From the NCBI RefSeq assembly GCF_000315625.1, contig NW_005434607.1, positions 55,040 through 119,039 of the forward strand: DNA of 64,000 nucleotides. Reading direction: 5' to 3'. This DNA comes from Guillardia theta CCMP2712. Its lineage: Eukaryota; Protista; Cryptophyta. Both the position numbers and the translations under genes were made by a program. The notes beneath the pieces are model-generated. The model did not search any database. It was not told the origin of the DNA and was given only the letters and a program-made list of their open reading frames with translations. Below, piece by piece: positions 1 through 24,000 of this stretch (within the stretch, counting starts at the first letter, position 1; every line of letters begins with the position of its first letter).

Positions 1-1
1 A

Positions 2-3000
2 TCCAGATGTCGGCCAGATCTTTTCGACCCGTACCCGTTGGTGATACACAAACCACGCCCCCTCTGTCTCCCTCGACCCTTCCCCGTACACTGACACTTG
101 CCCTGCCTCGCCGCGAGGAGACAGGCAGCTCACTTCCCACTCCGAAGTCACATTACACCTGGCCTGACGATCACCAAAGTTGATGTTCACCACCTCCTTT
201 GCATACCCATACCCCTCCACCCTGATCCAATCTCCTCCGTCCACGCCCCCGACTGAAGGCTCTATCCTCATCACCACAAACCCCGAAGTCCATTCGTACC
301 CAAACCCATGGGTGTCCCAGTCAACTCCATTCCTGCTGATCCCAACAGTCATGTTCCCCTGCCACGCTGACCTTGCACGCCCAGGCACCAACACTACCAC
401 CATGGTGGACGAGACATACTCGCTTACTTCTGCCCGCTGAGACCCGAGAGTGATCCCACACTCCCTGTCCAGATTCCTCCCGAGGATGGTGATCTTCTCC
501 TCTTGCCCCACCCTTGCTGCCGACGGCTTGATCTCATCGATCCGGGGTGGCTCGTAGTAAATGTAGCTTTGCTCTCCAACTATGTAATCAACGTCTCGTA
601 TCACAAGGCGAAGGCTCGTCCTCCCTCCTCCCTCAGACGACGCTGGCGCAACACACTCACAGACAGTACTCGATCGTACCTCTGCCCACACTCGCACTCT
701 TGCAAACGCACACAGCAACATCTCAGCCTCGAAGTCTTCTCCCTCGAGGAGCAAACGTGTCCCTCCCTGGCTGGGGCCTGACGTTGGATGTATGCTGGAC
801 ACAGAGGGTAAGCCCACGTATCGTACTACACACGCTGGGTTGATTTCCATGCTGTGTGCCGAGGGTCTCAGGCGATAGACTCCCTTGAGCTTGGGGGGGG
901 TCACGCATGTGGCCTGGTCCGAGTCTTGGACTTGACAAGACATCGCATGGTCGCCTACCAGCAACTCAAAGGTGACCCTGTGCATGAAGTGCCCCGACAG
1001 CGTGACCTCAGTGCCTCCAGTCTCGTAAACAGCCGATGGCCTGATAGCTTGTACCGATGCTTCGCCAAGGTAGGTGAAGTTGAAGCTGCTCTCGCAGTAC
1101 TTCACTCCTTGCATAGATAGCGATATCACCACCGAGCCTGCTGGATGCGGCGGCAGCTCGCAGGTCACGAGGCTTGACGAGAGCCACAAGCTCGTCGACT
1201 TTGCCGCCCCGAACCAGCACTCACGATCTTGTTCCTTCACAAACCCCTTTCCTGTCAGAATGACGCTTTCGTTCCTCCCGCTTGAGGAGCCCACGTCTGG
1301 CAACGCTGAAACTAGAGAGCACGCCTCCATGATCCGCACTTGACCGCTCGGATGCTCTGTGCACTCAGTATCTTCCATGCCTATGCCAATCGTCAGATCC
1401 TCCGGGACGGCTGTGGCAGGAATTGTGCACTCAATCTTGCTGTCAGACACAACCGACGAAGGCAAGACGGTCGTGCCCATACAGCAGAGAAACCCGTCTT
1501 GAAAGCCTGATCCCACAACCTCCAGCCTTGTAGGAACGGAGGTCACCCCTAGCGATGGCACTACATCTGTGATCTCAGGGGCTGCTATCACTTCCAGCAC
1601 GAGCTCTGATGTCATCGCGCCGCCATCTTGAGAGACATACAGCAGCTTTTCCCCTGGCGTCTGACTCGGCGACAGGCAAGCAAGCTTAGTCGAGGTCAGC
1701 CAGACTGCCAGTTGCGGATGCGCTTCATCATGTCGGAAGTCGCACCAGTATTCTGACTTATAGTCGAAGCCACGGCCAAACACCGTGATGCTGCCCGTCT
1801 GATGCGAGAAGAGCCTGCGAGGCTTCAAGTGCGAGACCGCGAAGCCTCGCAGAAACAAGAAGCTTGTCCCCGTGCTAAACCAGCTCCCTAACACCTGGAG
1901 ACTCAGAGTCGCGTTCCCGGCGTCGTGCCGTGGCGTCGTACAGCTAATCATGTTGGCAGCTATCCATCGCCCCCTGCTCGGCTCCGAGCCTTCTCCGAAC
2001 CTGCAACCCACCCCCGCGTCCGCTTCGAAGCCTCTCCCTATCAGCGTCACCGGGGTCTCCCCGCTCTCGGGTCCGCATGAGGGCTCGATCCGGTGCACCT
2101 CAGGCGCCTCGTAGAAGGATAACACCTTCTCGTCCTGCGTGAAGTCGACTCCGTTGAGCGACACCTCAACGTATACCTTCGGCTCCTCACGCGTTGCTGA
2201 GGCGATGCAATGCAGCAACGTCGAGGACGCAGTCCTTGCGGCGGTGACTTGAGTCCCCACTCGACACCACATGGAGTCCTCTCTGAAGTCTGTCCCGTAT
2301 ACTTGAATCTGCGTCTTTTGTTGGAGTTTGCAGAAGGAAGGTGTCAAATTCGTGATAGTGGGGGGTCTCACAAAAAGAAATTCTGCATTCCCAGAATGAA
2401 TTTCGTTTTCCATGCCAAGTATTTTGTCGATAGACATAGTTTGCTCTGTCGTTGTCATTGGTGTCAAACACTGTATTTGAGAGCTTGAAGGTCTTGATAT
2501 AAAATGGAATGGACGACAAGTAATTTTCTTTTTGATTATTGGATCGTAAGAAATAAGTATTTTGGTTCCTCCAGATATTGGACCAATAGTAGGATAAAAT
2601 CGAATCGAGCTGGTTATAATCTGGATGGCTGCGGTCAAAACACATCTTTCATCAGGATGTGAAATTCTAAACGAAAAATTACCCGCACGTTGCAAATAAA
2701 TGGTGCACTTCGCTGTAGTTGAGGAAATGATTTGAATGCCGGACCTTCGATTCTGAAACGAGCATAATGAATTGTTCAACATCTCCAAATTGCTGCCCCT
2801 CACAGTGATATCATGTTGGAGATCTTTGCTCCAGGAAATCACTGAAGGCATCACTTCCATGGACGGGAAAGAAGCAAATTTCAACAGGTGTCTATCACTC
2901 GTGCAGTCCTTCTCATTCAACCCGTACTCCACTGCTTGTACTGACGGGGAGACATAAGGAATGTGGCATACAAGCTTGGATGAGGTTACAAATCTTGTGG

Positions 3001-6000
3001 GTACAAATTTCTGTCCAACTTTGCACTTCCCCTGACTTTCAAAAGACGAACCAAAAATTGTTATCAAAGATGTATCATTGGTACAAACTTCGGAAGGAAA
3101 CAATGAAATTACTCGAGCAGCAAATTGAAGGAATTCAAATTTCAGTGTTTCCAACATGACCCGAGGATAGGAAGACGATTCATATACTTCCACCGTAACG
3201 AAACCTGCTGAGTGCTTTGGAGTAACACAGACAAACAACAATCGTGACTTTTTCTCACAGGACGATGCTGTGCGATCAAAGAGAACTTGCAAATTGTGTT
3301 GTTCAACATTCAAGACAACTGACACATAGTCTCCTCCTGCAGCTGATCCAGAACTTGGAACCAATTCGATATTACCACTTGAAATTGACAAAATACTGAA
3401 TTGTTGCGATGACCATTCAGTTTCAAATGCATCAGATACGAAGGATGGAGCACTGAAATATACTTGGAAGCTATGATTTCCTTCACGTAAAGAAAGCGAC
3501 ACACAAGTAAGTTTCGTGCTAGACGCCATGACAGTCATCATCATATGCTTTTCAGCTACGATGCATCTGTGTGATGACACATCAAAACTCTCTCCTATCA
3601 CTGTGACAATCGATGGTCGAAACGATCGAAGAACTTTCGGTGATATTTCCCAGACTCGTGGGGGTTTACGTACGATGATCTTGAGAGAATTCATGCTTGA
3701 TAGATGATCCATTCTTGCAGACACTTCAAATATTCCTTCAATCTCATTCGGAACTTGGCAGGTGATTGAATCAAAAGGAGCCGGGCTTGCCTCATATTGT
3801 TGAGATCGAACAATGCAAGAAATATTTTTGAATTTTGAAACAGATATGGAAAGCTTCAATAGCAAAAGAGTTGGTCGAAAAAGGAATCCAAAGGAAGGCT
3901 GGATAGACAAAATTCTGAAATCCTCACTCAAAAATTCAAAGTTCAACTTCGTTTGATACAGCTCGTTTTGGCCGTCAGTCACACGAAAGGAGTGATTACC
4001 CACAGTTCCTTCAGGAACGGTGCATTGAATGGAAGTAAAATTGATGTAGGCCGCTTTTGATCTGAATGATCCGAAAAGACATCTGTAGGTGGATTCCACC
4101 TGAAAATTATTGCCTAGGACCGTGACATAGGAACCACCCTGTTCGCTTCCATAAGAAGGAAAGATCGAGAGAACATAAGTATTCTGAAAAATCAGAACAT
4201 GTTCCATGAGGATTGACGGAAATTCCCTCCAAAACAGGTTGATTTTATTCTCCCCTACATTCAAAGAGACAAAAGTGCAACGAAGCATTGAAGAACTGAG
4301 AATAGAAGCCTCGTGATCCGCAATTTCACCCATTCGACATTTCAAGGTAAGGAACGGGGATGAAAGTCCAACACCAATCATGGTTATTGTGCTCACTTTG
4401 GTGTTTGTACGATTTGGAATGATTTGATCTATTCTCGGTCTTTGCACGAATGGAAACATGCCGCCGTTAGCAATATACTCTGATGAAGACGATTTGAGGC
4501 TGAACTTCACCTGCGAGGGAGCATCTAGAATCGGTGTATGACAAATGGCAAGTGATCGATTCACGACTGATGCACGTACGTTTTGGGATCCAAAGTAACA
4601 AGTTGTGGTCATATGCATGGAAAAGTTTTGTCCATGTACATATACACTGGTACTCTCATACAGAAATCCGACTGAAGGCTGGCATGTCACCAGTTCGACA
4701 GAGGGTACTTTCTGTGACATATTAGCTGTGACAAGGTTGAGTTTTGCTGAAGTTAATTCAAAGTCTATATTGTTGAAGCTCACATACATAGAAACATTGG
4801 AAATCAGTGGGACTGGCTCCAACGCGTACTGCACCTCGAAAGAGTTGTTTTGATTCTTCTGTGTGAGACGTTTCGATTGAACCTTTGCAAATTTCACCCG
4901 TACATCTGCATTCCAGTTAATGCTGCCAGTCACAGTCACAATACTTGCAGCATTTGCCAGGATCTGTGTAGGATTCACAAGAATATCTTGCGACGGCAGC
5001 CAGTGATGAAATATTTTTTCATCAGACATCAATTCATGAGCAACAAAGCTTATTCGAAACTCAGAAACAGCAACATTTGACTTTGGGGAAAGGCATTGCA
5101 AAGCAGTTGAAGACATGAATGTTCCAGCTGTAAAAATGGTGTGGGTCCCATTTCGAAACCTGAAAGTAAATGCACATTTCCAGTCATCTTGCACAAAATG
5201 GATGCCATAGATTTGAACTTTCGTGTTTCCTGTGCTCGGAGCATTATTCGGGAATATATCGAACAGTAAAGGCGTCGGAATCACATTCAAATGAGTTCTT
5301 GACAGTATACTGTCTCCCAAAAGCAACTCAAACTGCATTCTCTTAGGAGCCCCCCCTGGGAAAATACAGGAAACTGAAGTCGAATTCATCCACACAGTTC
5401 GCACACGATGACCATCAAAGTTGCAGGAGACATATGGAGAGAATTGAAAATCTACTTGGCCAGAGCATACAGCATACAATCTTGAGCCACCACAGCTATA
5501 TGCATATTCTGGAACAAGATTCCATTCATGTTGATCGGAGGTGTATAAGAATACAACTACTGATGTCTTGAGAGGTTGACTGTCTTGAACTAGAGTGAAT
5601 TGAACATAACCCAAGGCGTTCTTAGGTACCCAAGTGATAGCATGTGTCTTATTCACTCTATGAAGGTCTGCAATCGTCTCGCCAAATCTACACTTGACAG
5701 CAAAAGCATCTGGAAAGTATCCTAAGACAGTTATGGGATAACCACCCCGATGGCTCCCTGAAGTCGGGAATATACCTGCAAGAGAGAATCTGCTGTAATA
5801 TTCAAACCAAACGCCTCCATGCGATTGGGAAAATTTCGAAACAACGGAAACTTGCACCATGCCTTTAGCATGGGGCGGGGACAAACACGAACAAGACGTT
5901 GACGTCAAAAATCTGAAAGCAGCTCCCGCCTCATCGCCAAACCTGCAGAAAGATGACGAGACAATGAAGGTTCCTGTGATTGTCAGAACTGTTCCTCCAT

Positions 6001-9000
6001 CCAAAGGACCAGACGATGGAAAGGCACCAGAGATAAAAGTATCTTCAAATATTTCAATTTGCTTCGAATTTGTCATCACATTCGATGAGCGATCGAATGC
6101 AAATTGCAGCGAGACATTTGAAATACCAACTTGCCTTGCGAGAGGTACAAAGCATCGAGCAACACTTGAAGAAACCAACGCAAGATGAGTAAACTGCTGT
6201 CCAAACAAGCACTTCCATTGCTTGTAGGCGGGAGGAAAGATTCCTCTCAAGCTTATCAATTGACTGCCAAGCCTTGAAACTCTAGACGGAAACACTTCTA
6301 ATAGAGCTGGAGATTGAACAAACAAGAATTTGAAATCTAAATAAACAACGTGCGAATGCAGTAAAATCAAACTAAGAGTCGCGTTCCCGGCGTCGTGCCG
6401 TGGCGTCGTACAGCTAATCATGTTGGCAGCTATCCATCGCCCCCTGCTCGGCTCCGAGCCTTCTCCGAACCTGCAACCCACCCCCGCGTCCGCTTCGAAG
6501 CCTCTCCCTATCAGCGTCACCGGGGTCTCCCCGCTCTCGGGTCCGCATGAGGGCTCGATCCGGTGCACCTCAAGCGCCTCGTAGAAGGATAACACCTTCT
6601 CGTCCTGCGTGAAGTCGACTCCGTTGAGCGACACCTCAACGTATACCCTCGGCTCCTCACGCGTTGCTGAGGCGATGCAATGCAGCAACGTCGAGGACGC
6701 AGTCCTTGCGGCGGTGACTTGAGTCCCCACTCGACACCACATGGAGTCCTCTCTGAAGTTGACTCCTTCTACCTCCACAATCGTGTTGTCTACTCGTGGC
6801 ACTTGCAAAGGATGGATACCAGAAATGCTCGGAGGCATCGCAAACTCAAAGATCAGGTCAAGGCTGTCCCTTTCCTCCCGCTCTTGTCCTATTCCAAACT
6901 TGACGGCTCCTGGATATTCGACTGCTCGTGTTATGCAATAAGCCTTGTCGCTCTCAACTACTTCTGCTTCGACCGCTAGCTGCCCAAACCAGCATAAAGC
7001 ACCTCTCTGTGGCAAGTCGCTTGCCGACACCTCAACCCGAGTACCACCTCCCAATGGACCAATGGTAGGAGTGATCAAGATTGCCCTCGATCTTGGAACA
7101 GCCTCAAACACGACATCTCCAACACACTCATCAAGCCCAAACATCGAGACGCTCAGCGTTGTCGGACCTTCATGGCGTTGGGGAATCGAGCACTTCACCA
7201 GACTGGATGACAGCCACTGTCCGGGTTGAGATTGAGATGACGAGGCGTTCAAACGGCAGACAAGGTCCTCCACCGACAAGAAATGAGACCCGATCACTGT
7301 AATGGATGAGTGAAGTACCCCATTCACATATCCAGAAACCGTCGGGGCTGCTTCGTATGAAATGAGTATCTTGTTTGAGAAGCCATCTACTGCAGGTGTG
7401 TATATTGATAGCTCATACTTCCCCTGGGGCTGTGGAGAAAGATTGCATGTCACCATCGATCTGGAGTCTCCCATGACTGCAGTGCTGTCTCCGCCGACCT
7501 CGCAGAGGCTTAGTCCAGGCAAGAAATTCTGACCGTATATCGTCACCACTCCTCCTTTGTTGGATAAAGCTCGCCGAGGTATCACGTTGGATATTTCTGG
7601 GACTCCAGCGTCAACAAAAGAGAACGAGCTCGTTACAAGTGATCGCTTGTTTCCTATCAGCAGCTCGAGATGGACCTCCCCTGCATCATGCGGGGGAGCT
7701 GTGCACCTGACCTGAGTGGACGAGATGAGCGACGACTTGACTCTGAGCTGATCAAACACGCATTCGATTGAAGCATGCGGAGGGAATACCCCGCTGACGT
7801 AGACCGCTGTGCCGCCACTCACGTCTGCCATGGACGGCTGTGCGGTCATCACAGATTCACGAGAGTGAAACATGATCGTGTATGGCATGCTCTTGTGACT
7901 CGAATCCTCTGACTCCAAGGTCAACGACATGTTGCCCACGGCCTTTGTTGGTCGCTCACACACAACTGCCGAGGCCGAAAGCGGCGTCAACCTTGATCGT
8001 AGATGCTGATACCCAAACCGGCAGTACTGTAGCAAAGAACCGCTGAACCCCTCGCCAATCAACGTGATGAGATCTGTGGCACTATCGCTTTGTGTCGGCT
8101 GGACGTTCTTGATGTGTGGGACCTGCTTCAGCAGATACTGCACACTCTCTCCCTGCACCTTGTCATCCATGCTTCTGATTGTCACTTGGACACCGTCAGC
8201 TTGTAATGCCGGGACGACGCAGGTCAAAGATGTAGACGTCAAGACTTGAGCTGGTTCGCTCGAAGGTGTCTGATCGAACCAGCACGCAAGCCCGGCTTCC
8301 GCGAGGAAGTGAGAGCCCAATATCGTCACCATGGACTTCAATGCAGTGGGCCCTTCAGAAGGAAGCACAGCAGACACCTTCATAGGCTCATACACCAAGA
8401 ATCCCAGGCCTTGGCTGTGGTGGTTACCGATGTGTACCGAAATGCTCACCAGACCTTGCAAGACTGGTGGAAGGTAGCATTGCACAACGTCAGACTGAGT
8501 GAATGATCCAGGCGTCATGATGCCATTCATCTCACAGGCAGCACTCCCACCGAACGACCACCCTTGGTCGTCGAGAAGGACGTTTATCTCAACTCCACCT
8601 GCGGAAGGTCCTACGGAGGGGAAAATATTTTTTATCAAATGCATGTTTTCGTTCAGGAAGAATGGCCTGGAGAATATTTTTCCATCATTTGAAAGTGTTA
8701 CAGAGCTGTTTCTTGCAAGGATGTTTGTATGGGTCGAAATTGATAACAATATTGGAGATTTTTGATGTATCTCATCCTTGCCGAAGATGTGGGATCCAAC
8801 TTTGCATTTCGAAAGATTTGTTATTAGAAAATTGGATCCCGAAATTTCTAAGAGAACTTTTCCTGGGGTACTGATGTAGTCGACTGCTACTTGATCTATG
8901 CTGGGGATTGGTTCCATGAATGTCACATTCTCTCCGCTGCAGACAGAATCATTGCTGAATATTTCAAAATGGTTTATCTCAATTAACGATGGACTTCCAC

Positions 9001-12000
9001 ATGTTATACTAGTACTTGATATCATCATCGCCAGAAGACTGTAGGACGAATTAAATTTGCAATGATACGTCTGCCCAACAAGGAACTTTCCCAAAACCAG
9101 GATGTTTTCTTCATTCAAAAGAAATATTCTGTCAAACCTGCAAACAAATCTGTGAATCAATAATTCATTCTTTGACACTCTGATTCCTGAAAAGAACAAA
9201 GATAGCGTATGTGAACCTTCATCAAGAAATGGTAATCTACATCCTTGCAATTCAAACCCACACTGCTCAAGAGGTGACGAATAAGCTCCAATTTTACATG
9301 AGAGCGACGATGTCTGAGCAATTTGCGGCAGATCCTTTGCAATGATGGTGACCAAAAAAGAGTTGGTATCATGATACCATATTTGAGGAGATACAGATGT
9401 CAATAGTATTTGATCTATGACTGAAATCTGAGCTGTATAAACTGGCGAGAACGAATCATCAAGAATCGTGATCGACAAGTTCCCAGTGATTGTACGGTGT
9501 ATAGGAAAATGTCCAGAATCATCACTCAGGACAACAAGTTTTTCTTCGGGCGCTAATCCAGCTTTGATGTAAAGATTCTTCAGCGACAAACCAGATCCAA
9601 AAACGCTGATGCTGGAAGAGATATCCTTCAAGACTATCAAGGGTTTGATGAAGTCAATATGAGGTCGCTCAAAGAATTCGAAAACAAGATCCTCCGACAA
9701 TGCTTTCTTTTGAGACTGAAAAAAGAAACCAAAGTAGCAAACAGCAGGCGTATGACTCGGTGATCTGCACATGAAAACCTTTCTGTCCCTACTAAGAACT
9801 GCCTTGACAGATACATTGCAAAATTTGCAAAACCCATCCATTCCTGCAATCAATCCTGATTGTAAAAAGACCATCACAGTATCTCCACCTTCCAGTGAAC
9901 CAGATGTCGGCCAGATCTTTTCGACCCGTACCCGTTGGTGATACACAAACCACGCCCCCTCTGTCTCCCTCGACCCTTCCCCGTACACTGACACTTGCCC
10001 TGCCTCGCCGCGAGGAGACAGGCAGCTCACTTCCCACTCCGAAGTCACATTACACCTGGCCTGACGATCACCAAAGTTGATGTTCACCACCTCCTTTGCA
10101 TACCCATACCCCTCCACCCTGATCCAATCTCCTCCGTCCACGCCCCCGACTGAAGGCTCTATCCTCATCACCACAAAGCCCGAAGTCCATTCGTACCCAA
10201 ACCCATGGGTGTCCCAGTCAACTCCATTCCTGCTGATCCCAACAGTCATGTTCCCCTGCCACGCTGACCTTGCACGCCCAGGCACCAACACTACCACCAT
10301 GGTGGACGAGACATACTCGCTTACTTCTGCCCGCTGAGACCCGAGAGTGATCCCACACTCCCTGTCCAGATTCCTCCCGAGGATGGTGATCTTCTCCTCT
10401 TGCCCCACCCTTGCTGCCGACGGCTTGATCTCATCGATCCGGGGTGGCTCGTAGTAAATGTAGCTTTGCTCTCCAACTATGTAATCAACGTCTCGTATCA
10501 CAAGGCGAAGGCTCGTCCTCCCTCCTCCCTCAGACGACGCTGGCGCAACACACTCACAGACAGTACTCGATCGTACCTCTGCCCACACTCGCACTCTTGC
10601 AAACGCACACAGCAACATCTCAGCCTCGAAGTCTTCTCCCTCGAGGAGCAAACGTGTCCCTCCCTGGCTGGGGCCTGACGTTGGATGTATGCTGGACACA
10701 GAGGGTAAGCCCACGTATCGTACTACACACGCTGGGTTGATTTCCATGCTGTGTGCCGAGGGTCTCAGGCGATAGACTCCCTTGAGCTTGGGGGGGGTCA
10801 CGCATGTGGCCTGGTCCGAGTCTTGGACTTGACAAGACATCGCATGGTCGCCTACCAGCAACTCAAAGGTGACCCTGTGCATGAAGTGCCCCGACAGCGT
10901 GACCTCAGTGCCTCCAGTCTCGTAAACAGCCGATGGCCTGATAGCTTGTACCGATGCTTCGCCAAGGTAGGTGAAGTTGAAGCTGCTCTCGCAGTACTTC
11001 ACTCCTTGCATAGATAGCGATATCACCACTGAGCCTGCTGGATGCGGCGGCAGCTCGCAGGTCACGAGGCTTGACGAGAGCCACAAGCTCGTCGACTTCG
11101 CCGCCCCGAACCAGCACTCACGATCTTGTTCCTTCACAAACCCCTTTCCTGTCAGAATGACGCTTTCGTTCCTCCCGCTTGAGGAGCCCACGTCTGGCAA
11201 CGCTGAAACTAGAGAGCACGCCTCCATGATCCGCACTTGACCGCTCGGATGCTCTGTGCACTCAGTATCTTCCATGCCTATGCCAATCGTCAGATCCTCC
11301 GGGACGGCTGTGGCAGGAATTGTGCACTCAATCTTGCTGTCAGACACAACCGACGAAGGCAAGACGGTCGTGCCCATACAGCAGAGAAACCCGTCTTGAA
11401 AGCCTGATCCCACAACCTCCAGCCTTGTAGGAACGGAGGTCACCCCTAGCGATGGCACTACATCTGTGATCTCAGGGGCTGCTATCACTTCCAGCACGAG
11501 CTCTGATGTCATCGCGCCGCCATCTTGAGAGACATACAGCAGCTTTTCCCCTGGCGTCTGACTCGGCGACAGGCAAGCAAGCTTAGTCGAGGTCAGCCAG
11601 ACTGCCAGTTGCGGATGCGCTTCATCATGTCGGAAGTCGCACCAGTATTCTGACTTATAGTCGAAGCCACGGCCAAACACCGTGATGCTGCCCGTCTGAT
11701 GCGAGAAGAGCCTGCGAGGCTTCAAGTGCGAGACCGCGAAGCCTCGCAGAAACAAGAAGCTTGTCCCCGTGCTAAACCAGCTCCCTAACACCTGGAGACT
11801 CAGAGTCGCGTTCCCGGCGTCGTGCCGTGGCGTCGTACAGCTAATCATGTTGGCAGCTATCCATCGCCCCCTGCTCGGCTCCGAGCCTTCTCCGAACCTG
11901 CAACCCACCCCCGCGTCCGCTTCGAAGCCTCTCCCTATCAGCGTCACCGGGGTCTCCCCGCTCTCGGGTCCGCATGAGGGCTCGATCCGGTGCACCTCAG

Positions 12001-15000
12001 GCGCCTCGTAGAAGGATAACACCTTCTCGTCCTGCGTGAAGTCGACTCCGTTGAGCGACACCTCAACGTATACCCTCGGCTCCTCACGCGTTGCTGAGGC
12101 GATGCAATGCAGCAACGTCGAGGACGCAGTCCTTGCGGCGGTGACTTGGGTCCCCACTCGACACCACATGGAGTCCTCTCTGAAGTTGACTCCTTCTACC
12201 TCCACAATCGTGTTGTCTACTCGTGGCACTTGCAAAGGATGGATACCAGAAATGCTCGGAGGCATCGCAAACTCAAAGATCAGGTCAAGGCTGTCCCTTT
12301 CCTCCCGCTCTTGTCCTATTCCGAACTTGACGGCTCCTGGATATTCGACTGCTCGTGTTATGCAATAAGCCTTGTCGCTCTCAACTACTTCTGCTTCGAC
12401 CGCTAGCTGCCCAAACCAGCATAAAGCACCTCTCTGTGGAAAGTCGCTTGCCGACACCTCAACCCGAGTACCACCTCCCAATGGACCAATGGTAGGAGTG
12501 ATCAAGATTGCCCTCGATCTTGGAACAGCCTCAAACACGACATCTCCAACACACTCATCAAGCCCAGACATCGAGACGCTCAGCGTTGTCGGACCTTCAT
12601 GGCGTTGGGGAATCGAGCACTTCACCAGACTGGATGACAGCCACTGTCCGGGTTGAGATTGAGATGACGAGGCGTTCAAACGGCAGACAAGGTCCTCCAC
12701 CGACAAGAAATGAGACCCGATCACTGTAATGGATGAGTGAAGTACCCCATTCACATATCCAGAAACCGTCGGGGCTGCTTCGTATGAAATGAGTATCTTG
12801 TTTGAGAAGCCATCTACTGCAGGTGTGTATATTGATAGCTCATACTTCCCCTGGGGCTGTGGAGAAAGATTGCATGTCACCATCGATCTGGAGTCTCCCA
12901 TGACTGCAGTGCTGTCTCCGCCGACCTCGCAGAGGCTTAGTCCAGGCAAGAAATTCTGACCGTATATCGTCACCACTCCTCCTTTGTTGGATAAAGCTCG
13001 CCGAGGTATCACGTTGGATATTTCTGGGACTCCAGCGTCAACAAAAGAGAACGAGCTCGTTACAAGTGATCGCTTGTTTCCTATCAGCAGCTCGAGATGG
13101 ACCTCCCCTGCATCATGCGGGGGAGCTGTGCACCTGACCTGAGTGGACGAGATGAGCGACGACTTGACTCTGAGCTGATCAAACACGCATTCGATTGAAG
13201 CATGCGGAGGGAATACCCCGCTGACGTAGACCGCTGTGCCGCCACTCACGTCTGCCATGGACGGCTGTGCGGTCATCACAGATTCACGAGAGTGAAACAT
13301 GATCGTGTATGGCATGCTCTTGTGACTCGAATCCTCTGACTCCAAGGTCAACGACATGTTGCCCACGGCCTTCGTTGGTCGCTCACACACAACTGCCGAG
13401 GCCGAAAGCGGCGTCAACCTTGATCGTAGATGCTGATACCCAAACCGGCAGTACTGTAGCAAAGAACCGCTGAACCCCTCGCCAATCAACGTGATGAGAT
13501 CTGTGGCACTATCGCTTTGTGTCGGCTGGACGTTCTTGATGTGTGGGACCTGCTTCAGCAGATACTGCACACTCTCTCCCTGCACCTTGTCATCCATGCT
13601 TCTGATTGTCACTTGGACGCCGTCAGCTTGTAATGCCGGGACGACGCAGGTCAAAGATGTAGACGTCAAGACTTGAGCTGGTTCGCTCGAAGGTGTCTGA
13701 TCGAACCAGCACGCAAGCCCGGCTTCCGCGAGGAAGTGAGAGCCCAATATCGTCACCATGGACTTCAATGCAGTGGGCCCTTCAGAAGGAAGCACAGCAG
13801 ACACCTTCATAGGCTCATACACCAAGAATCCCAGGCCTTGGCTGTGGTGGTTACCGATGTGTACCGAAATGCTCACCAGACCTTGCAAGACTGGTGGAAG
13901 GTAGCATTGCACAACGTCAGACTGAGTGAATGATCCAGGCGTCATGATGCCATTCATCTCACAGGCAGCACTCCCACGGAACGACCACCCTTGGTCGTCG
14001 AGAAGGACGTTAATCTCAACGCCACCTGCGGAAGGTCCTACGGAGGGAATTACTTCTCGAGCTTGAAGATCCAGTGCCAACGGAAGTGAAATGAGGAGTT
14101 CAGATAGGATCTCTTGTTGAATAGAAATCGCGAATGTCTGATTTTCGGATTTCAAATTTGGTGGCAAAGGACATTTAACTGCATCTAGCGAACACTCGCA
14201 AGAATCTATTTTGTTTCGTCCAAGGTGAAACTCATAAGAGTTTTGGCATGATATGTTTGCAACCTTCACTTTGAACCATTCCGCAGCTCTGTCATAGCTT
14301 TGAAGATACAGAAGAATGGGAGTTTCATACACTTCAATTTCAAAATTACCAAAGTACGTCTGATTGTCTAAGAAAATCGTGCACCTGGTGTTACCAATTT
14401 CAAGCAGAGGGACTCTGCATACCACGTGTTGAGGTGGTTGGTAGTGTCCTCTAGTCTGTTCAGATTCCCAATGACAAGTGACATTCCCCAATAATTCATC
14501 ATACCACAAAGAATCTGATCTATTTATCTTGATCCTTACAACTTTCCCATCCATTCGTGGTAAGGCTCTTGGGTACGCATCAAGGGATAGCCCTTCACGG
14601 CTCTTTTCAAATCGTAACTCGATACCTGTCGGCAAGGTCTGATTCCCACAAACCAAAGTCAATGGGTATATTCCTGCTGAAACCCTTTCAAGTGTGCATG
14701 TCATCTTTTCTCTGCTCAGTACAACAGCGGGAAACGGCCTCGAAGAAATCAAACAGTACATACAATCCAAAACAAAATTTTCACCTTTGACAGTCAGCAC
14801 TGTTCTTTCATCTGAATGCAAAAAAGCAGGTTCAATCGTAAGAAACTTAATGTATTTGTTCAGCTGGACACTTGTATTGGCCAGTTGTAAGCTTTGCCCA
14901 GAAATGTCAATCAAGGAAATCGTAAAGTTTCCTTCCAAATGAGGAGGCCTCTCACAAACGATTATTTCATTGTCTACCAACGTTGCTGTTGCCTCAACAG

Positions 15001-18000
15001 ATCCAAAGAAGCATTTTCGTTGGAGGAATTGAAATGAATTGCCTACGATAGTGACTTGATCGTTGTACAGCGAAGTGGGTGTTATCGAAAGAAACGTGGG
15101 TCGAATCATGCATCGAATCATGATCGCATCTTGCAAGCAATTTCTGCGATCAAAACACAATTCCATTGTATGGTCACCATGCCTCGTACAATTCACGGAG
15201 ATTGCGATTGATGTTTGAGATATCTGAACAACTTCTGCAACTGAGCTTAATGTGCTTATGGATATCTGAGAGTTGTTTGGAAAATTCTTTCCGAAGACAG
15301 TAACGATAGAAGCTTCATATACGCCAACAGCAGACGGTCTTACTTCAATCACCACCGGAATAGTAGCTTTATCAAAGTCATCAGATTGCATTTGAGCGTG
15401 ATGTATCGATCTGTCAACATGCAATACTGCAGTTCTGCCAAAATCCATATTGAAAACACAATCGTTACCCACTTGGACAGTATGATTGCCGGGGTTGAGG
15501 ATTGTATCCAACGTTGCTGTCAACATAGTTGAGGACAACCATTCTACATTTTTGCACAGAGTCTGACCTAACCGAAGGCAGAGCGATTCCGCAAAGTGCA
15601 CTCCAAAGATGGTGACGAGTACACTCTCGAAGGTAGTTGTTCTTGATGGTTTGATGAAATTTACAATAGCGGCAGATGAAAAGGCAAGTAATACGCTATT
15701 GGAGTAGTGATATTCATCATATGTGAGTTGTACCTTGACTTGAGTTTTTTGAGGCAAGGAAGGAGTGGACACTATGACTTGACTCGATCCAATGAATTTA
15801 GCACTTCTCACTAAATGCGAGTCAAATACAACTTTCAAGATCAAATCTATTTGAAAGCCATGGTGGCTTTGTATTGTGATCACTGTACCGCCTCGTGTAG
15901 ATATGATAGAAGGATAGATTGTAGTAATTTTCAGCTGCGAGTAGTAAATAAAAACTTGCCTTGCTCCCACTCTAAAGTTGCCAAACGACAAGCCAACAAA
16001 AGTTTGCCCTGAATGAGGCGTCGCAGGAAGAATGCAATAGAATTCTGCTTCCTGTTGGTGAACTGGAACAGATTCGCTTCCAAAATAACATTGAGAATTC
16101 GGCCTTGGAGGGAATTCACCGTCCATGGTAACTCTCAAGCCACCGTGGATTGGACCCAATGAGGGGTAGAACTTAATCACGCTAGAGTTTATCGCTTCAA
16201 AGGTCATGTGATTGCTGCTAGTGACTTCATTAAATGATAGGAATAGGCCATAAAATCCTGGTCTCTCAACAGCAATGCTTGTTATGACCTTGGAGCTACT
16301 TACATAGGTCGCTGCAAACCTGCTATTGGAAAGGCATGCAGTCGGGTTATTTAAAAAGTGTTGACCAATTAAGGTGATTGTAGAATCCCCAGAATTGATA
16401 CGGGTTTGTCTTGGGAACAAATCAAGTAAAATTGGTTGATTGTAGAAATGGAACACAAACTGTGCGGTTGGGACATATGAATCCACGTCAAAAGCGAAAG
16501 ATCCTTCAGTATGAGGAGGTATATAGCAACGCAATCTTGTCGAGGAGATGAATTGAGTGATCAAGGTAGTGCTGCCCTCGTTACACCTTGAATCACTATC
16601 AAAACTGCTTCCTAATATCATTACCCAGAAATCACTGTTTGATGGTCCAAAATAAGGCATTATTGAAGTAATGGCAGGAGGCTCACGTATTTCCAAGACT
16701 CCAACAGAAAAATGAAAGTAAGTTTTCAGATCATTGGTGCAATTCAGGTATAAATTAACAAAACTGGTTGATAAAGCAGGTGTATCACATAAAATTTGTG
16801 TAGCATTCACATTTTTAGAAAGCATGCTGAGGTTTTCATACAAGCAGACGCACCTCTTGAAGTCAAACCCTTGTCCCTTAACGCTTATCGTGGTTGTTGA
16901 GCTTGAGCACACTTTAGTGGGCTCAAGTGTATACACTTTAGGAACCATCCTGACTTCATGCAAATGAATGTGAGAAAATTCGTTTACTCCGACGAAATTT
17001 TGAAAACGACTGTTCCAGATCGTGATTTCATAAATTCCAGGATCAAGGGCAGGAAGTCTGAAATGGAGCAGAGAAGTTGACAAAAAAGATGTGGGCAAGG
17101 ATACACGGTAAGGGAAATCCTTCGACGTCACGTAGATACTTAAGAATGAGTCTAGATTCTCCCCATGTACTGTGAGGATGTCAGATGACGCCGAAAGAGA
17201 AGTTGCTGGGATGATTGAGAATATCTTTTGAGACATTGCAGGGGTAGACAAGTTGTCACGATAGAGCTCAATTCCGTTGTAGATCAGGACAAACCCTTGC
17301 AATTTTGCTGTTGGCCGATGAGGAATGTTGCAAAAGATGAGAGATGGAGGTATAGTTTGCCCAAGGAAAATCTCATCATTTATTGTACAGTGTACAACTG
17401 AGCTGTTGGAAATCTCCTTCCCAATGAATTCAAGCCTGTCATACCTTTTGTTGTATGTTACTGATCGTATTTGTGGCATATCAATGTAAGTGAACATTTG
17501 ATTGCATTGAATTCTTTCACCTTCAATTTCAAAGAAAACCTGAAAACGTCCAGTGAGCTCGCAAGCAGGAAGTACACAGACTAAATCTGTTGCATTCAGT
17601 CGCATACATGTGGAATTTTTGGAAGAACTGTTCAAAACTCCGCAAACAGCATGTCCAACAATGCTGGCTTCCGATAATTTTACCGTAATACTCTGAGTGT
17701 AGCCCTTGATTCCAACAGAGGGTGAAATCAGCAGAACTCGAGGTAATGGTCGAAATTCGAATAGAAAATCTATGAATACTGTTAGACCGTTGTCGAATGA
17801 CAATGAAACTGTGCTATTTCCAATAGGAGAATATGGTACTTTACAACTCTTATTCTGAAAATCCATCAAGGCAGAAGTCTTATTGCTTCCAAATAGACAA
17901 TACACATCACCAGTATTCTCAGGCAATTGGCCAAGAATGGTCACATAAAAGCCTCCCTTGTGAGGACCTGATGAAGGATATACGGCTGGAGATGGACCTT

Positions 18001-21000
18001 TTGAATGAAATATTCTCAAATGATGTTGGTACAAAAGCTGATCTTCAAAAACGTGGAATTTGACATTTACATTGCTCGTGTTGAAGATCCCTTTTATCAA
18101 ACAACTAATCATTGATGACGTTAGATAGACAGCGCGCTCAGTCTTTCCCAGAGCAGTACAGTACAAAGTAATATCCTTGTGCATCCCTCGGCCTATTATA
18201 GTAATCGACTTCCTGCTAGCTGGCAGAGACAGAAAGGGGACTACCTTATCCACGATTGGTTGAGGAACTAGCAATAGTTCAGACATTGACAATGCTTCAG
18301 AAGAAGAGTGCGAGAAGAAACCAACTTTAATGCTTCCTGCTCGATGCATCTTTTGTAACACAAAGGAATTGTTGGTAATATCAGCGACGGTCTCGTTTAT
18401 GACTGCAAAATCTAATGGCAAACCAAGGAATTGGTAACCAGCTATTGAGATTGACATTCCACCTTCAACGAATGCGATAGATGGAATTAAAGAGACTTGT
18501 TTGACGTGTTCAGCCACTCGAATTTGATGTGAATTGTGCATGCAGGCATCAAAATTGAAACATATCTGCAATGCTACAAAATTTGAATGCATGGGCGACA
18601 TTAAGCAAGTGAGCTTTGTGGAACTTGTCAGCAAAGCGGTGACCAACTTACTCGCCCCAAACTTGCAAACCAGACTCTCTGATGGTACAAAGTCTTCCCC
18701 GATCACTGTGATCATTTGTTTCATCGTAGAGACCACAACCTCTGGATTTACCTGTAAAATCCTGGGAGATTTGCGATACATGAAAACAACAGCTTCGTTC
18801 AAGTCCAGTAGCGTTCCATTGTAGTAAAGAGCGATGGGGCTGGGTCCTGGCGGGTTGGGAGGAAGCGTGCAAAGCAACAAGGTCGAAGAGACAAAGGAGG
18901 TGATTGCAGTCTGCTTATCGAAAATGACTTCAAACAAGTTTGAGAGAAAATTTCCGCCGAAAATAGAAATTATCTGACCTCCGTCTCCTAGGGAACTCGT
19001 AGGTTTGACTGAATGAATGTGAGGCCTTTCCCAAAGATGGACGAACACTGAGTATATCCGACTTTGAGATTCCATATCGATGATGCTCAGCAGATGGGAA
19101 CCCTTGTAGCCATCTGGCAGGGTGCAACAACGAGAACGGTCACCGTGACACAAATACGAATTGCTGATTCTGGAATTGTTTACTTTGCATCCCAAAGAAC
19201 GGTCAAGAGTTTTGTTGATTCGAAGAGCGGCCAAGTTTAGGTTTGTTCCCTCAAACAAGGCAAGAACAGCCCCAACGCTTTGAATTTTAGGTAGCACTTG
19301 AAGCATGATTTGGCTAGATATCGCGCTGATTGAGTGAGGCGAAGTGACAACTGAGACAGAATAATTGCCCACTTTTTCAAGATCGACAAGGCATATGATT
19401 TTTGAACAAGTCAGCCACTCTCCCGTGAAGAACTGTTCGCTTAAAGAACAACTCACTTTGCGAGGATATGCAAAATTCATCTCAGTTACAACAGTGATTT
19501 TTGACCTTTGGTTTGGTATAAACCTTGGCAATACATCGAGTATTTTGAAGGAATGATAGAAGTGAAATGAAAGATTCGTTCTTGTGTAAGAGCTACCGTC
19601 AAATGAGATTTCAAGATGTACATATCTCGATCTATTCATCGGAGAGGTAACACACTGCACAAGAGAGGATGACAAAATACGAGCCTCAGTGACATTTTTT
19701 GATCCAAATCTGAGCAAAACTCGTGAAGCTGAGCCGAAAATGCCAGAAACTTTTACAATCGTCCCACCTTTCACAGGGCCTATCGAAGGTTCTACCATAT
19801 ACAATTTGACATCTTCTTGAAATATAAATGACATCGCATTGGAATGGCAATCCACTGTATCATTGTGCGAAGATAAAACGAAAGAAACTCTACAGGCCTT
19901 CATCATCGGTGGTGCCATACATCGGATGAAATTCTGGAATTTTTCGTGAATAGGAACACACACCATATCAAAGCAACAGCTCTGAGCAAGTTGAATCGAA
20001 TCTGAGAGTGTATGGACTTGGATTTCTGTTCCACCGAGAATTTCACTGCTAGATGGAAACAGACTAAGAACACTTAAAGATTGCATACTTTGTATCTGCA
20101 ATGAATTACTCTTCCTTCCTTCAATGTCGATGACAAAAATTTGCTTCTGCTCAGGGTCTATTGGAGGAGATGAACATTTCAGCATAGAATTAGAAAGGAC
20201 TGTGGCTTCCAGAACTGCTTTCGTACCCAAGATCGTACAATACTTTGGCGGGCCGTTGTCTAAAAATCTTCCTGTCAAAGTGAAAGTAACTCTAATGCGT
20301 GAACAGAAAAGAGATGGATGCACTGAGGATAAGAGCATGTGGCTTCTGCCTAATTGTAGAAAGTCAGATTTGAATAATGCAATATCATCTGTTGAGTCAG
20401 AAAGGACGAGAGAAATGTTTCCTATTTGTTCTGGTGGAATTTGACACTGAACGAGTGAGCTAGAAGTAAAAAGGACATGAAAATAACTCAATTGCTCCAA
20501 ACATGAAAACTGACAAATCAAACCAGAATGAAGATTTCTCCCCGTAATCATTATATTATTCCTCTGCAATAACCCAGCGCTTGGTATGACTCTGTCAATG
20601 TGGACCCTGGTACCAGCCGAAAAAGGAGTTGTTACCGTTGGATTGTGAAAGAAGCCACCATAAATTGGATTTAAACAGTCAGGTAAGTAAATTCCAAAGG
20701 TTGAATTGCCTCGAGGAAACAAATCCTGGGGGATGACACAATACGCAAGTGAGCTGGAAACTATTTGGAGATCAATCTTTGAATCTCTTGCCAGCAAAAT
20801 ATAGGCTTTTGTCAGAAAATTAAAATAGCTTCCAACGATTGTCACCATAAACTTTGGATCTTTTGAGGTGATCTCAGTGAAAGAAACTTGAGAGATCTGA
20901 GGAGAGATATGGTATTCAAAGAAACTTCCTGTTGGAAACATGAATTCTTTGTCTATCAAAAGAGAAAATGGTATGATCGAAGTTTGAGAATCTTGGAGTT

Positions 21001-24000
21001 TGTTCGACTCAAGGTTTGGTGGAAAGCAAACATATTGATTGTTTGAATATACAGCAAAACTCCAAAGCCCCTTCTCCCCAAAAATACAATCAATTCGATT
21101 GAATCGATGAAAGATTCCAGAAATTGTGATTGGGCATGCATTGTGTATGCTTCCACGGGTAGGATAAATTCGTACCTGATTTGATGCATTGACATATTCT
21201 ACTTTGATCTTTGGTGACAAGAATGCACTCGATGCGAGATTGTAATAGACTGAATGTATACCCAACGATCGTTTTGGCATCCAAACTCTATTTTCTGTCG
21301 ATGAAATCCATTGAGACCTGATCACTTCGTCATCCATGCTCCAACATGAACTGCAAGACCTAAAATTTTGTCCCAAAACTGTAACTTGCATACCCGAAAG
21401 ATATACGATCGATGGAAGGACTCTTAGAAGTAGCGGTGGCTGAAATGTTGACACAAGAAATACGTTTGAGTCGACATCAATCCCATTGTTTGAAACGCTA
21501 ATCGTGGAAAACCAAGATGAATTGCTGAATCGACTACAAGTAATTATGCTTGCTGAGGTCCAGATTCCATGAGCTTTCTTCTTGTCTAGGAAGCAGCTTA
21601 ACGAAGGCACATTCATGAAATTTTGACCCAGCAATGTGATTACATTATGTCTGAACGAAAAACGAGCATCTTGAATAACAATGGGAGGATAGAAAGAGAA
21701 GGGATGTTTTGCAAACGAATAGCTGCTTGCTACATTCAAGACTTCGAGTTGGATCATGGATTGCTTGTGAGTAGGTGAAATGCATATATACCTGCCAGAT
21801 CCATTGACTGGTTGAAGAGGAACCCTCAAAGAACCAAACGAACAAATGTAATTGTCTATCGGAAGTTTTTCGTGAAACTCAAAAGTGACGTGGGTGCCTC
21901 CTGAAGCCGGTCCAAATGAAGGGTACATTGTGTTCAAGACAAATTCACTGATGACGTGGAATTTCTCTGCACTCCAAAGAGTCTTATCAGAGTCTATTCT
22001 GATGCCGAAGTCGAAAAGTCCAACCTCCGAAAAGGCAGGAGACTCACAAATTACAAGCTGTGGGGAAGCAAGAGACGCGCTTGTTGTGAAATTGCCGAAG
22101 ATGCATGAAAGGGCTGAAAGATTGTCAAGGAAAAAGCCTTTGATCTGAACAGCTATTCTAGGGGCTCGATGAATCAGTGCAGCTGAAGGCTCAAGATTCA
22201 AAATCTCTGGCTTTGGAAGTATGTGCAAACAACAAAACGGGGTCGATACCTCCTTTCGTGTGTGGCTGTAAAGACTTATCGTCATGTTCCCCTGTATCGA
22301 ATGGCTTGGAAGGGAACAAATCAGGAAAGACTGTGTGACTCGGACACTGCTCAAGAACAAACGAGATCCCAAACTGCAATTCAACGGCAATCTATCATGA
22401 AAATTGGTTCCCAAAATCGTGATAGACAAAGCAGAATGTGTAATCAATGAGGGACGCAAGTCAAGGATCGTTGGCATCCCCAACACCTCAACGAACAAAT
22501 CACTCTCTCTTGCTATGTCATTGAATGGGTGAAGGATGGATTGGATGCCGGAATTCATCATCGGTGGCACTTCGCACAAGGCAATTGAAGATGAGACATA
22601 CTGCCCTGGGACAATGAAACCTTCCATGACAAAGCATGCTCCAAACAAAGATTGAGGGTATGGAAACCCCTCACCGATGAGACTTACCGTGCTGGCAGAA
22701 CCCATCGTGACAATGCTTGGACGTATTTCAATGAGATCAGCTCGCTGATCAAGCTCAAACGAAGCAGCAGCAGACTCATGCAAACAAACGACCTCTATAA
22801 TTGACCTTGCTGGTAGCTTGACTGATGATTCGCAGCTTATAAAGGTGGAAGTATGTAAATGCAGGCTTTTAGCATGCAAATGTGATAGCAGACATGAACA
22901 ACTAAGATCAAAACCGGTTCCATATATTTCAAAGGAATATCGGAGGAGGTTGAGATACTTTAGGCTGGCATTGAATATTCTCAAATTGATGTACTGAACT
23001 GAGAAAGGTATGGAAAAGTTGTAAAGATCTGATTCAATTGCCACTGAAGCTATTCCAGGCAATTCTGGGATGGTTTCTGTAGTGATCATCGAGAGAGAAA
23101 ACCACTGAATTTTGGTTTGCTTTCCGGACGGAAACTTCAGGTAGAAACCTATCCTTGGGTCAAAATGTTCTCCACGCAGGGTGATCGTGGTACGCCCTGA
23201 GCTGGTCACTTCTGAGGGGACCACTTGCAAAATCAGAGGTTCCTGAAAATACTCATAATTCGACTTATAAACCACGTCGTCATTTGCATCGAATAATGTC
23301 AAATCAAAGAGGCCTGATTCAGTTGAACGGGGAGCAACAATCTGAAAGACTAAGCCGCTGTAGTTTAACCTGAATGTCGAGTTCAGAAGATTCGCGACGA
23401 CAGGTTGCTTATCCATGGTAGGTATTCGAATTTCGACGGCATTTCCCTCTGTCGGTCCCTTAGAGGGAACAAGTAAAGCATTGAGAACCAGAGAGAAGGT
23501 CAAGTTGTTTGAGATTCCTCTGTAAGTAGTTCTGATTGCAACATGCATTCTGGTTGTATCTGTGCCCACTTGTGGGACAGAACATAACAACTTAAAAGCA
23601 TTGACGAAAACAGTTTGCACTTGTAGCATTCCAATTTCACATTTGCAACTCGAATCAAAGTTCTCACCGAAAACCGTTATGCCATTGGCAGTTGACTTTG
23701 AAACAACACTTGGTGATAAGGAAATTAGTCTTGGAAGATCAACGATTGTGAAAATCTGATTAAACTTGAAGACAAAGGAAGCATTGAGAGACAGCGATAC
23801 CGTGTAGTTTCCAGGGCTGCGTACAGGAATTGCGCATTTTAGAAGGCTGGAACTCTGCCAAATAGCACGAGCGTGAATGTTTAGACCAAAGACACACTGA
23901 AATGTAAAATGGCTTATCAAATTACGACCATAGATTGCCAAGGGAATTCCAGAATGTGCCTTTGTTTCCGTAGGTGAGAAATGTGAAAAAGATATTTCGA

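What the first reader, a model, noticed from the sequence alone, without database searches (positions are those of the whole stretch)
3..14047. In-frame cassette mosaic: overlapping halves of one 4.1-kb GC-rich block re-used between unique AT-rich domains
The block 9900-14047 reappears as two partial, overlapping copies (6375-8620 and 3-2289) separated by unrelated IPT sequence (8621-9899, 2290-6374). This is not a simple tandem duplication. Both offsets (9897, 5427) are multiples of 3. The junctions fall mid-domain, with different flanks continuing the fold in register: IQVYGTDF|REDSMWC vs VEVEGVNF|REDSMWC, GNATLS|LQVLG vs GNATLS|LILLH, IKNIF|PSVGPSAGG vs AREVI|PSVGPSAGG. Inference: homology-guided segmental gene conversion or cassette patching diversifies the protein. 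Mosaic VSG and vlsE surface antigens form in a similar way, but here it would act inside one giant exon.
Basis: partly seen in the sequence, partly recalled or inferred. Interest (0 to 1): 0.85.

Follow-up and report, generated by a model that had tools for sequence, protein, structure and literature searches.

The report
Old in-gene repeats kept identical
Inside a roughly 21,000-residue IPT/TIG-repeat gene of the alga Guillardia theta, three partial copies of a 4.1-kb block of domains are old duplicates that gene conversion keeps almost identical and GC-rich, so this is ordinary concerted evolution, not an antigen-style diversity generator.

Summary
Block M (9897-14047) recurs as A (0-2289, 99.7%) and B (6371-8620, 99.5%). 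They share a 389-nt core Y. All offsets are multiples of 3 and the edges are razor sharp. The flanks are only generically TIG-like. GC is 55-60% in the blocks and about 40% outside.

The window is Guillardia theta CCMP2712 scaffold JH993031.1. The gene lies on the minus strand and holds about 224 TIG domains.

Independent DNA runs show the same junctions and 2-3x depth in the blocks, so this is not an assembly artefact and there is no donor archive. Transcript peptides of the sister genus Hanusia phi carry the same Y-U1-Y junctions, although the orthologues are only 54-77% identical. A 2-4% diverged relative has the same layout. It differs from the reference at 35 listed block sites where all reference copies agree.

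So the duplicates are old and are homogenised by non-allelic gene conversion. GC3 rises with copy number: 0.39 unique, 0.57-0.65 for two copies, 0.75 for three. That fits GC-biased conversion. The process homogenises; it does not diversify. It is a clean new example of a known process. The scan noted similar composition mosaics in other giant genes of this genome; I did not check those notes.

The parts
1..1900 (-). Copy A of segment X, about 7.3 TIG domains. Its true edge is at window 0, just outside the window.
   Evidence: 99.7% identical to 9897-11797. GC3 is 0.65. The U0|X junction context appears as a loose end in three runs.
1901..2289 (-). Copy A of core segment Y (389 nt), which is present three times.
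   Evidence: GC3 is 0.75. Hanusia P0140 runs from U1 into Y across this junction.
2290..6370 (-). U1: unique AT-rich spacer of about 15.6 diverged TIG domains.
   Evidence: No repeat is found here. GC3 is 0.39. It is 54.5% identical to Hanusia P0140, which has Y on both sides.
6371..6759 (-). Copy B of core segment Y.
   Evidence: Contigs of runs X1 and X2 cross 6370/6371 by 34 nt.
6760..8620 (-). Copy B of segment Z, about 7.2 TIG domains.
   Evidence: 99.5% identical to 12187-14047. Word depth is 2.1-2.2x that of the unique segments in X1, X2 and X6.
8621..9896 (-). U2: unique AT-rich spacer of about 4.7 TIG domains.
   Evidence: GC3 is 0.39. One X1 contig spans 8555-9929, and an X2 contig spans 6375-8861.
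9897..14047 (-). Block M: the full X-Y-Z block (X 9897-11797, Y 11798-12186, Z 12187-14047), 16 TIG domains. Z sits here in its ancestral position.
   Evidence: Hanusia P0122 is colinear across 14047/14048 from U3 into Z.
14048..18496 (-). U3: unique AT-rich TIG domains upstream of M in gene order.
   Evidence: 53.6% identical and colinear with Hanusia P0122. GC3 is 0.39.
2..44197 (-). Downstream open frame of the giant gene. It continues left of the window to a stop at window -5249 and totals 16,482 aa.
   Evidence: It matches Pfam TIG at E 1e-173 to 1e-302. An iterated profile finds 175 TIG units.
44107..57876 (-). Upstream open frame of the same gene: 4,590 aa with 49 TIG units.
   Evidence: Hanusia P0180 joins the two frames in one continuous protein.
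45092..45891 (-). Smaller converted pair: 800 nt, 99.4% identical to 51182-51981, offset 6090.
   Evidence: GC1, GC2 and GC3 are all raised against the flanks.
18649..18901 (-). Smaller converted pair: 253 nt, 99.6% identical to 24673-24925, offset 6024.
   Evidence: GC3 is 0.55 against about 0.40 in the flanks.
35307..35748 (-). Smaller converted pair: 442 nt, 99.1% identical to 37698-38139, offset 2391.

Best explanation
The window holds most of one giant minus-strand gene of Guillardia theta. It codes for about 21,000 residues and at least 224 IPT/TIG domains. In gene order the studied stretch reads U3-[Z Y X]-U2-[Z Y]-U1-[Y X]-U0.

The three bracketed pieces are old intragenic duplicates of a 16-domain block. 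They are repeatedly homogenised by non-allelic, non-crossover gene conversion. Conversion can act only where homology persists. So sequence outside the tracts has drifted to the roughly 25-40% identity typical of any two TIG domains, and the edges have become razor sharp.

Heteroduplex repair biased towards G/C, acting against an AT-leaning mutation input, has raised GC in the tracts in step with the number of conversion partners. This has also pulled amino-acid composition towards Gly/Ala/Arg/Pro.

The effect on the protein is that sets of domains stay identical, not that they diversify.

Shown: the repeat anatomy, its presence in independent data, its presence in a relative and (for Y-U1-Y) in another genus, paralogues more alike than orthologues, and GC3 rising with copy number.

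Inferred: that the homogenising process is gene conversion rather than another copying process, that the GC shift comes from biased repair, and how the duplicates first arose.
For: - Organism: the NAA15 neighbour is 100% identical to a G. theta CCMP2712 protein. The scaffold is JH993031.1, and window position 1 is record position 55040.
- Anatomy.
- Not an artefact: contigs of DNA run X1 cross 6370/6371 and 8620/8621. Loose ends reproduce the X|Y, Z|U3 and U0|X contexts exactly. Word depth is 63-78 in unique parts against 135-170 in the blocks. X2 and X6 show the same 2-3x step.
- Old layout: Hanusia phi P0140 is Y-tail + U1 + Y-head. It is colinear with window 1931-6421 and starts and ends on the same seven residues. 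Hanusia P0122 is colinear from U3 into Z and stops 6 residues before the Z|Y edge. One search gives the sources of these peptides.
- Paralogues more alike than orthologues: copies differ by 0.26-0.49%. The X6 relative differs from the reference by about 1.9% in the blocks and about 3.6% in unique parts. At 35 of its 39 listed block differences all reference copies agree, and 22 of those 35 are synonymous. At the other 4 sites X6 matches M. Identity to Hanusia is 67-77% in the blocks.
- GC signature: GC3 is 0.75 for Y (3 copies), 0.65 for X, 0.57 for Z, 0.55 and 0.47 for the small pairs, and 0.39 for unique segments. The neighbouring genes are at 0.42-0.45. A per-domain Mann-Whitney test gives p = 2.5e-9. 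The GARP/FYMINK amino-acid shift is the same in the Hanusia orthologues.
- All segments sit in one transcript, so expression-linked codon selection cannot explain the steps.
- Elevated GC in converted tracts is a known hallmark of gene conversion (PMC2720389).
Against: - No long read spans the whole 14 kb. The order of the blocks rests on the original Sanger assembly plus short-range junction evidence. At 9899/9900 the contigs overlap by only 30 nt.
- Logan contigs pop small bubbles, so the claim that X6 has collapsed, near-identical copies rests on depth and contig length.
- For X and Z, age beyond the X6 split is only suggested: by Hanusia amino-acid composition and by where P0122 ends.
- The GC bias is not shown by polarised substitutions. 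The few polarisable paralogue differences are 5 S>W against 3 W>S. Block differences between X6 and the reference are symmetric, 14 against 14.
- The 35-44 kb part of the gene has GC3 of 0.51 without a long partner.
- The blocks are also more conserved as protein, so selection contributes something.
Confidence: 0.75

Rival explanations
1. Recent cassette patching: pieces of block M were copied recently into unrelated TIG domains to diversify the protein, in the manner of VSG or vlsE mosaics.
For: Copies are 99.5-99.8% identical with sharp edges inside domains, and the flanks are unrelated.
Against: The same junctions occur in Hanusia phi, whose orthologue is about 55% identical, and in a 2-4% diverged relative. 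Depth shows 2-3 copies only, so there is no donor archive. The copies are near-identical and are the most conserved parts of the protein, so nothing is being diversified.
Confidence: 0.04
2. Assembly artefact: reads from a simpler repeat were mis-joined in the 2012 Sanger assembly.
For: High-identity repeats of 2.2 kb are hard to assemble, and no long read was available to me.
Against: Contigs from other runs cross or abut every junction tested, and depth doubles exactly within the block limits. Y (389 nt) is shorter than a Sanger read. The copies carry their own private differences. Hanusia transcripts show two of the junctions independently.
Confidence: 0.03
3. Gene conversion homogenises the blocks, but their GC richness and amino-acid make-up reflect selection, or an inherited GC-rich state of a conserved functional module, and not biased repair.
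For: The blocks are more conserved between genera (67-77% against 54%) and between strains (1.9% against 3.6%). The 35-44 kb region is also GC-richer (GC3 0.51) and more conserved (62% to Hanusia P0180) without a long partner. Observed differences show no clear W>S excess.
Against: The largest shift is at third codon positions (0.39 to 0.57-0.75) within one transcript. It scales with copy number, and the small 253-nt and 800-nt pairs show it too. Protein-level selection does not predict this.
Confidence: 0.15

Closest known systems
Concerted evolution of duplicated genes by non-allelic gene conversion with raised GC (for example the mammalian pairs BMP8A/B, DDX19A/B and TUBG1/2, PMC2720389; histone and Hsp70 cases from my own knowledge)
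   Same: Paralogues are more alike than orthologues. Copy number is stable across lineages. Converted and divergent regions form a mosaic with sharp limits. GC3 is elevated inside the converted tracts.
   Different: Here the partners are multi-domain pieces inside a single open reading frame, dispersed between unique domains. The organism is a cryptophyte. A survey of GC-biased conversion that lists G. theta used a 3-chromosome, 26% GC genome, which I take to be the nucleomorph, and found no signal (PMC5635611).
Intragenic segmental duplications of giant muscle genes: the nebulin triplicate region and the titin segmental duplication (PMC9109913, PMC9142044)
   Same: Blocks of several domains are repeated with very high identity inside a giant modular gene. 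Such blocks are expected to be prone to copy-number change by non-allelic recombination.
   Different: Those blocks are tandem and contain introns. Here the copies are partial, overlapping, separated by 1.3 and 4.1 kb of unique domains, and lie in one uninterrupted frame.
VSG (Trypanosoma) and vlsE (Borrelia) segmental gene-conversion systems
   Same: Homology-guided copying of in-frame segments.
   Different: Those systems use many silent, differing donors, one expression site, and change between clones. Here there are 2-3 near-identical copies, a layout fixed across strains and genera, and homogenisation.

Membership tests
Concerted evolution by non-allelic gene conversion | Paralogous copies within a genome are more similar than orthologous copies between lineages that share the duplication. 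| tested here: met
   Copies differ by 0.26-0.49%, against about 1.9% to the X6 relative. At 35 listed sites all reference copies agree against X6. Identity to Hanusia is 67-77% at the amino-acid level.
Concerted evolution by non-allelic gene conversion | The duplication pre-dates the lineage split: same junctions and same copy number. | tested here: met
   The X6 contigs give the same loose ends and the same 2-3x depth. Hanusia P0140 carries both Y|U1 junctions. For X and Z in Hanusia the evidence is only indirect.
Concerted evolution by non-allelic gene conversion | Structure is preserved: conversion rather than unequal crossing-over. | tested here: met
   The unique spacers U1 and U2 are retained at single depth in three runs.
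GC-biased gene conversion | GC, especially GC3, is raised in converted tracts relative to the flanks. | tested here: met
   GC3 is 0.57-0.75 against 0.39 and scales with copy number. Mann-Whitney p = 2.5e-9.
GC-biased gene conversion | An excess of W>S fixations in polarised substitutions. | tested here: inconclusive
   Only 8 paralogue differences can be polarised: 5 S>W and 3 W>S. Differences between X6 and the reference are 14 against 14. No nucleotide outgroup was available.
VSG/vlsE-type cassette diversification | An archive of multiple, differing silent donor cassettes. | tested here: not met
   Depth fits 2 copies of X and Z and about 3 of Y. No other copy lies within 79 kb.
VSG/vlsE-type cassette diversification | The arrangement or content varies between clones or strains. 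| tested here: not met
   X1, X2 and X6 show the same junctions, and Hanusia shows the same Y-U1-Y.
IPT/TIG domain proteins (Pfam PF01833) | Significant match to the family profile. | tested here: met
   E values from 1e-173 to 1e-302, with many matched stretches per 5,000-aa piece.
Tandem intragenic segmental duplication (NEB/TTN type) | Head-to-tail copies of the whole block. | tested here: not met
   The copies are partial, overlapping and separated by unique spacers of 1279 nt and 4081 nt.

The most novel reading that the evidence does not exclude
This single open reading frame is an internally controlled record of GC-biased gene conversion in a cryptophyte nuclear genome. Third-position GC climbs from 0.39 (one copy) through 0.57-0.65 (two copies) to 0.75 (three copies) within one transcript. 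The process has run since before Guillardia and Hanusia split and has remodelled the amino-acid make-up of specific TIG domains. A bolder variant: identical multi-domain modules are kept by selection, for example for self-pairing of a roughly 21,000-residue filament.
Probability: 0.5. Interest if true: 0.5.

Novelty: new member of a known kind. Interest (0 to 1): 0.38.

Why it matters
It replaces an exciting but unsupported reading, antigen-like cassette shuffling in a free-living alga, with a well-supported ordinary one.

The locus is still a useful example. It shows long-lasting concerted evolution of dispersed multi-domain blocks inside one giant reading frame. The compositional signature is dose-like and changes the protein's amino-acid make-up. 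The lineage is the cryptophyte nucleus, where I found no paper describing biased gene conversion.

It also warns annotators in two ways. The current gene models cut this gene into fragments. And sharp GC steps inside G. theta giant genes need not mean foreign DNA.

Tried and rejected
- In-register remnants of an older, larger duplication in the flanks: none above background. 'U1 tail against Z tail' scores 125, close to the 95th percentile (128), so it is not significant.
- A simple tandem duplication model cannot produce X-Y-Z / U2 / Z-Y / U1 / Y-X without a second copy of U2. This is reasoning from the map.
- GC-rich donor copies elsewhere: none in the 79 kb around the gene, and depth allows no extra copies.
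- A Hanusia orthologue of U2, to date the X and Z duplicates: not found in the exhaustive representative search. Only an X fragment, P0222, turned up.
- A metagenome contig scan with U2 and its flanks found no relative.
- RNA evidence in G. theta: only 6 reads from the 6% of run X11 that was sampled, so expression and strand are unresolved.
- Paper searches found nothing on this gene or on TIG domains in G. theta. The only gBGC survey that lists G. theta used a 3-chromosome, 26% GC genome and found no signal.
- An intron at the 44.1-kb frame change: rejected, because the Hanusia protein aligns straight through with no residues missing.
Full report
**What the window is.** The largest open frames are on the minus strand: 2-44197 (14,732 codons, open at the window start) and 44107-57876 (4,590 codons). 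Both match Pfam IPT/TIG overwhelmingly and match nothing else of note. The next gene (61071-62972, minus strand) is the NatA auxiliary subunit. It is 100% identical to a Guillardia theta CCMP2712 protein. Look-ups place the window on scaffold JH993031.1, with window position 1 at record position 55040. Sequence fetched to the left shows the frame running on to a stop at window -5249, so the downstream frame alone has 16,482 codons. An iterated profile built from one domain finds 175 + 49 TIG units with a median spacing of 87 residues. The public annotation splits this gene into several models, for example GUITHDRAFT_113438.

**The observation.** BLASTN of the region against itself gives 0-2289 = 9897-12186 (99.74%, 2290 nt). 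It also gives 6371-8620 = 11798-14047 (99.51%, 2250 nt) and the three-fold core 1901-2289 = 6371-6759 = 11798-12186. None of these has gaps, and the offsets are 9897, 5427 and 4470, all divisible by 3. Identity drops to chance within the first 30 nt beyond each edge. I name the segments X (9897-11797), Y (11798-12186) and Z (12187-14047). The + strand then reads X Y U1 Y Z U2 X Y Z. In gene order this is U3-[ZYX]-U2-[ZY]-U1-[YX]-U0. Copy A ends at a true edge that happens to lie at the window start: the fetched sequence to its left is unrelated. The junctions lie inside TIG units, at about profile positions 6, 23, 66 and 10 of 81, so each junction domain is a chimera in register. Flanks compared in register score like any two phase-matched TIG segments. 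GC steps from about 40% to 55-60% exactly at the edges. The same gene holds three further in-frame near-identical pairs of 800, 442 and 253 nt.

**Is it an assembly artefact?** I laid four public runs on 4100-10050. In X1, a DNA run from a different study, one contig runs from U1 34 nt into Y. Another runs from 66 nt inside Z through all of U2 to 30 nt inside X. In X2 a 2,485-nt contig covers Y, Z and 241 nt of U2. Loose ends at 6371, 8620 and 9900 are exact matches to the other contexts in the assembly: the X tail, the U3 head and the U0 tail. Word depth is 63-78 in U1, U2 and U3, against 135-170 in the blocks. X2 (about 4-6 against 9.9) and X6 (about 5-8 against 13-18) show the same step. 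That fits two copies of X and Z and about three of Y, and leaves no room for further copies elsewhere. The 79 kb I could read holds no other copy. No long read was available, so the long-range order still rests on the original assembly. At 9899/9900 the contigs overlap by only 30 nt, one short of the tool's bridging rule.

**How old is the layout?** Searches with M and U1 returned transcript-derived peptides of Hanusia phi, the sister genus. P0140 (1,498 aa) aligns end to end with window 1931-6421. It comprises the last 17 residues of Y, all of U1, then the first 119 residues of Y. It begins and ends on the same seven residues, as expected when an assembler walks Y-U1-Y and closes the loop. 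Both Y|U1 junctions are therefore present in Hanusia, although U1 is only 54.5% identical between the two genera. P0122 (2,097 aa) is colinear from U3 into Z, so block M holds Z in its ancestral place. It stops six residues before the Z|Y edge, where a second incoming context would create an assembly branch. P0222 is an X fragment at 64% identity.

Run X6 is a metagenome that holds a relative 2-4.6% diverged from the reference. It shows the same loose ends, including a U1-like continuation after Y. It carries each block as single contigs, up to 1,309 nt long, at 2-3x depth.

**Concerted evolution.** The reference copies differ at 6 sites (A against M) and 11 sites (B against M). Twelve of these 17 are synonymous. 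X6 differs from the reference by 39 sites in 2,040 nt of block (1.9%) and by 105 in 2,896 nt of unique sequence (3.6%) (table 8). Of the 39 listed block differences, 35 are at sites where every reference copy carries the same letter, and 22 of those are synonymous. At the other four sites X6 agrees with M, so B carries the young change. The duplicates thus pre-date the split, yet they are more alike within a genome than between genomes. That is the definition of concerted evolution. Because the unique spacers and the copy number are retained, non-crossover gene conversion is the likely agent rather than unequal crossing-over. This is the same argument as in PMC2720389.

**The GC signature.** GC3 is 0.75 in Y (three copies), 0.65 in X and 0.57 in Z (two copies each). 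It is 0.55 and 0.47 in the 253- and 800-nt pairs, and 0.39 in U1, U2, U3 and the other unique stretches. Neighbouring genes have GC3 of 0.42-0.45. All three codon positions shift. Gly+Ala+Arg+Pro rise from 0.16-0.19 to 0.25-0.32, while Phe+Tyr+Met+Ile+Asn+Lys fall. Per-domain GC3 in M against unique domains gives Mann-Whitney p = 2.5e-9. The Hanusia orthologues show the same amino-acid shift: Z 0.267 against U3 0.182, Y 0.243 against U1 0.178, and the X fragment 0.286. So the contrast is old. All segments belong to one transcript, so expression-linked codon selection or transcription-linked mutation cannot produce these steps. Raised GC in converted tracts is a recognised hallmark of biased gene conversion (PMC2720389).

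This part remains an inference, for four reasons:
- The few differences I could polarise (5 S>W, 3 W>S) and the symmetric X6 differences (14 against 14) neither show nor exclude a fixation bias.
- The blocks are also the better conserved parts as protein: 67-77% against 54%.
- The blocks also diverge more slowly between strains: 1.9% against 3.6%.
- The 35-44 kb part of the gene has GC3 of 0.51 with only a 442-nt partner.

**Comparison with known systems.** The locus works like classical concerted evolution of paralogues with GC enrichment. In anatomy it recalls the high-identity segmental duplications inside nebulin and titin (PMC9109913, PMC9142044), but its copies are partial, overlapping and dispersed. 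It fails the defining features of VSG/vlsE-type diversification: there is no donor archive, no variation in arrangement, and no diversity among the copies. I found no paper on this gene or on biased conversion in the cryptophyte nucleus. A broad survey lists G. theta with 3 chromosomes and 26% GC, which I take to be the nucleomorph, and found no signal.

**Verdict.** This is a new member of a known kind, of moderate interest. Earlier first-reader notes of this scan mention similar composition mosaics in other giant genes of this genome (s1-432912, s1-433049). I did not test them.

Noticed in passing
window 44103-44121 (overlap of the two frames is 44107-44197): The two halves of the giant gene are in different frames. 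Hanusia phi P0180 aligns straight through this point with no residues missing. So the break in the CCMP2712 assembly looks like a one-base frame change, either a sequencing error or a real mutation, and not an intron.
   Followed up: partly
window 35001-44197, and left of the window at about -4270 to -2900: These parts of the same gene are GC-richer (GC3 about 0.51-0.67) than the 0.39 baseline, yet have no long near-identical partner within 79 kb. The 35-44 kb part is also better conserved against Hanusia (62%). The cause is unexplained. It could be former conversion partners, or a partner elsewhere in the genome.
   Followed up: partly
window 45092-45891 / 51182-51981; 35307-35748 / 37698-38139; 18649-18901 / 24673-24925: Three more in-frame pairs, 99.1-99.6% identical, with sharp edges and locally raised GC. 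They look like smaller instances of the same process.
   Followed up: partly
window 2-57876, continuing left to -5249: The public annotation cuts one continuous coding region of about 63 kb into several models of 77 to 2,904 aa. At least one of them, P0121, matches the open frame at only 78% with gaps, which suggests wrongly predicted introns.
   Followed up: partly
L001:6400-9850 (just right of the window end): This stretch has almost no G or C and is open in all six frames. It is most likely a run of N, a scaffold gap, beginning close to the window's right end.
   Followed up: no
run X6: A run labelled as a freshwater metagenome holds a Guillardia-like organism only 2-4.6% diverged from CCMP2712 at this locus.
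   Followed up: no
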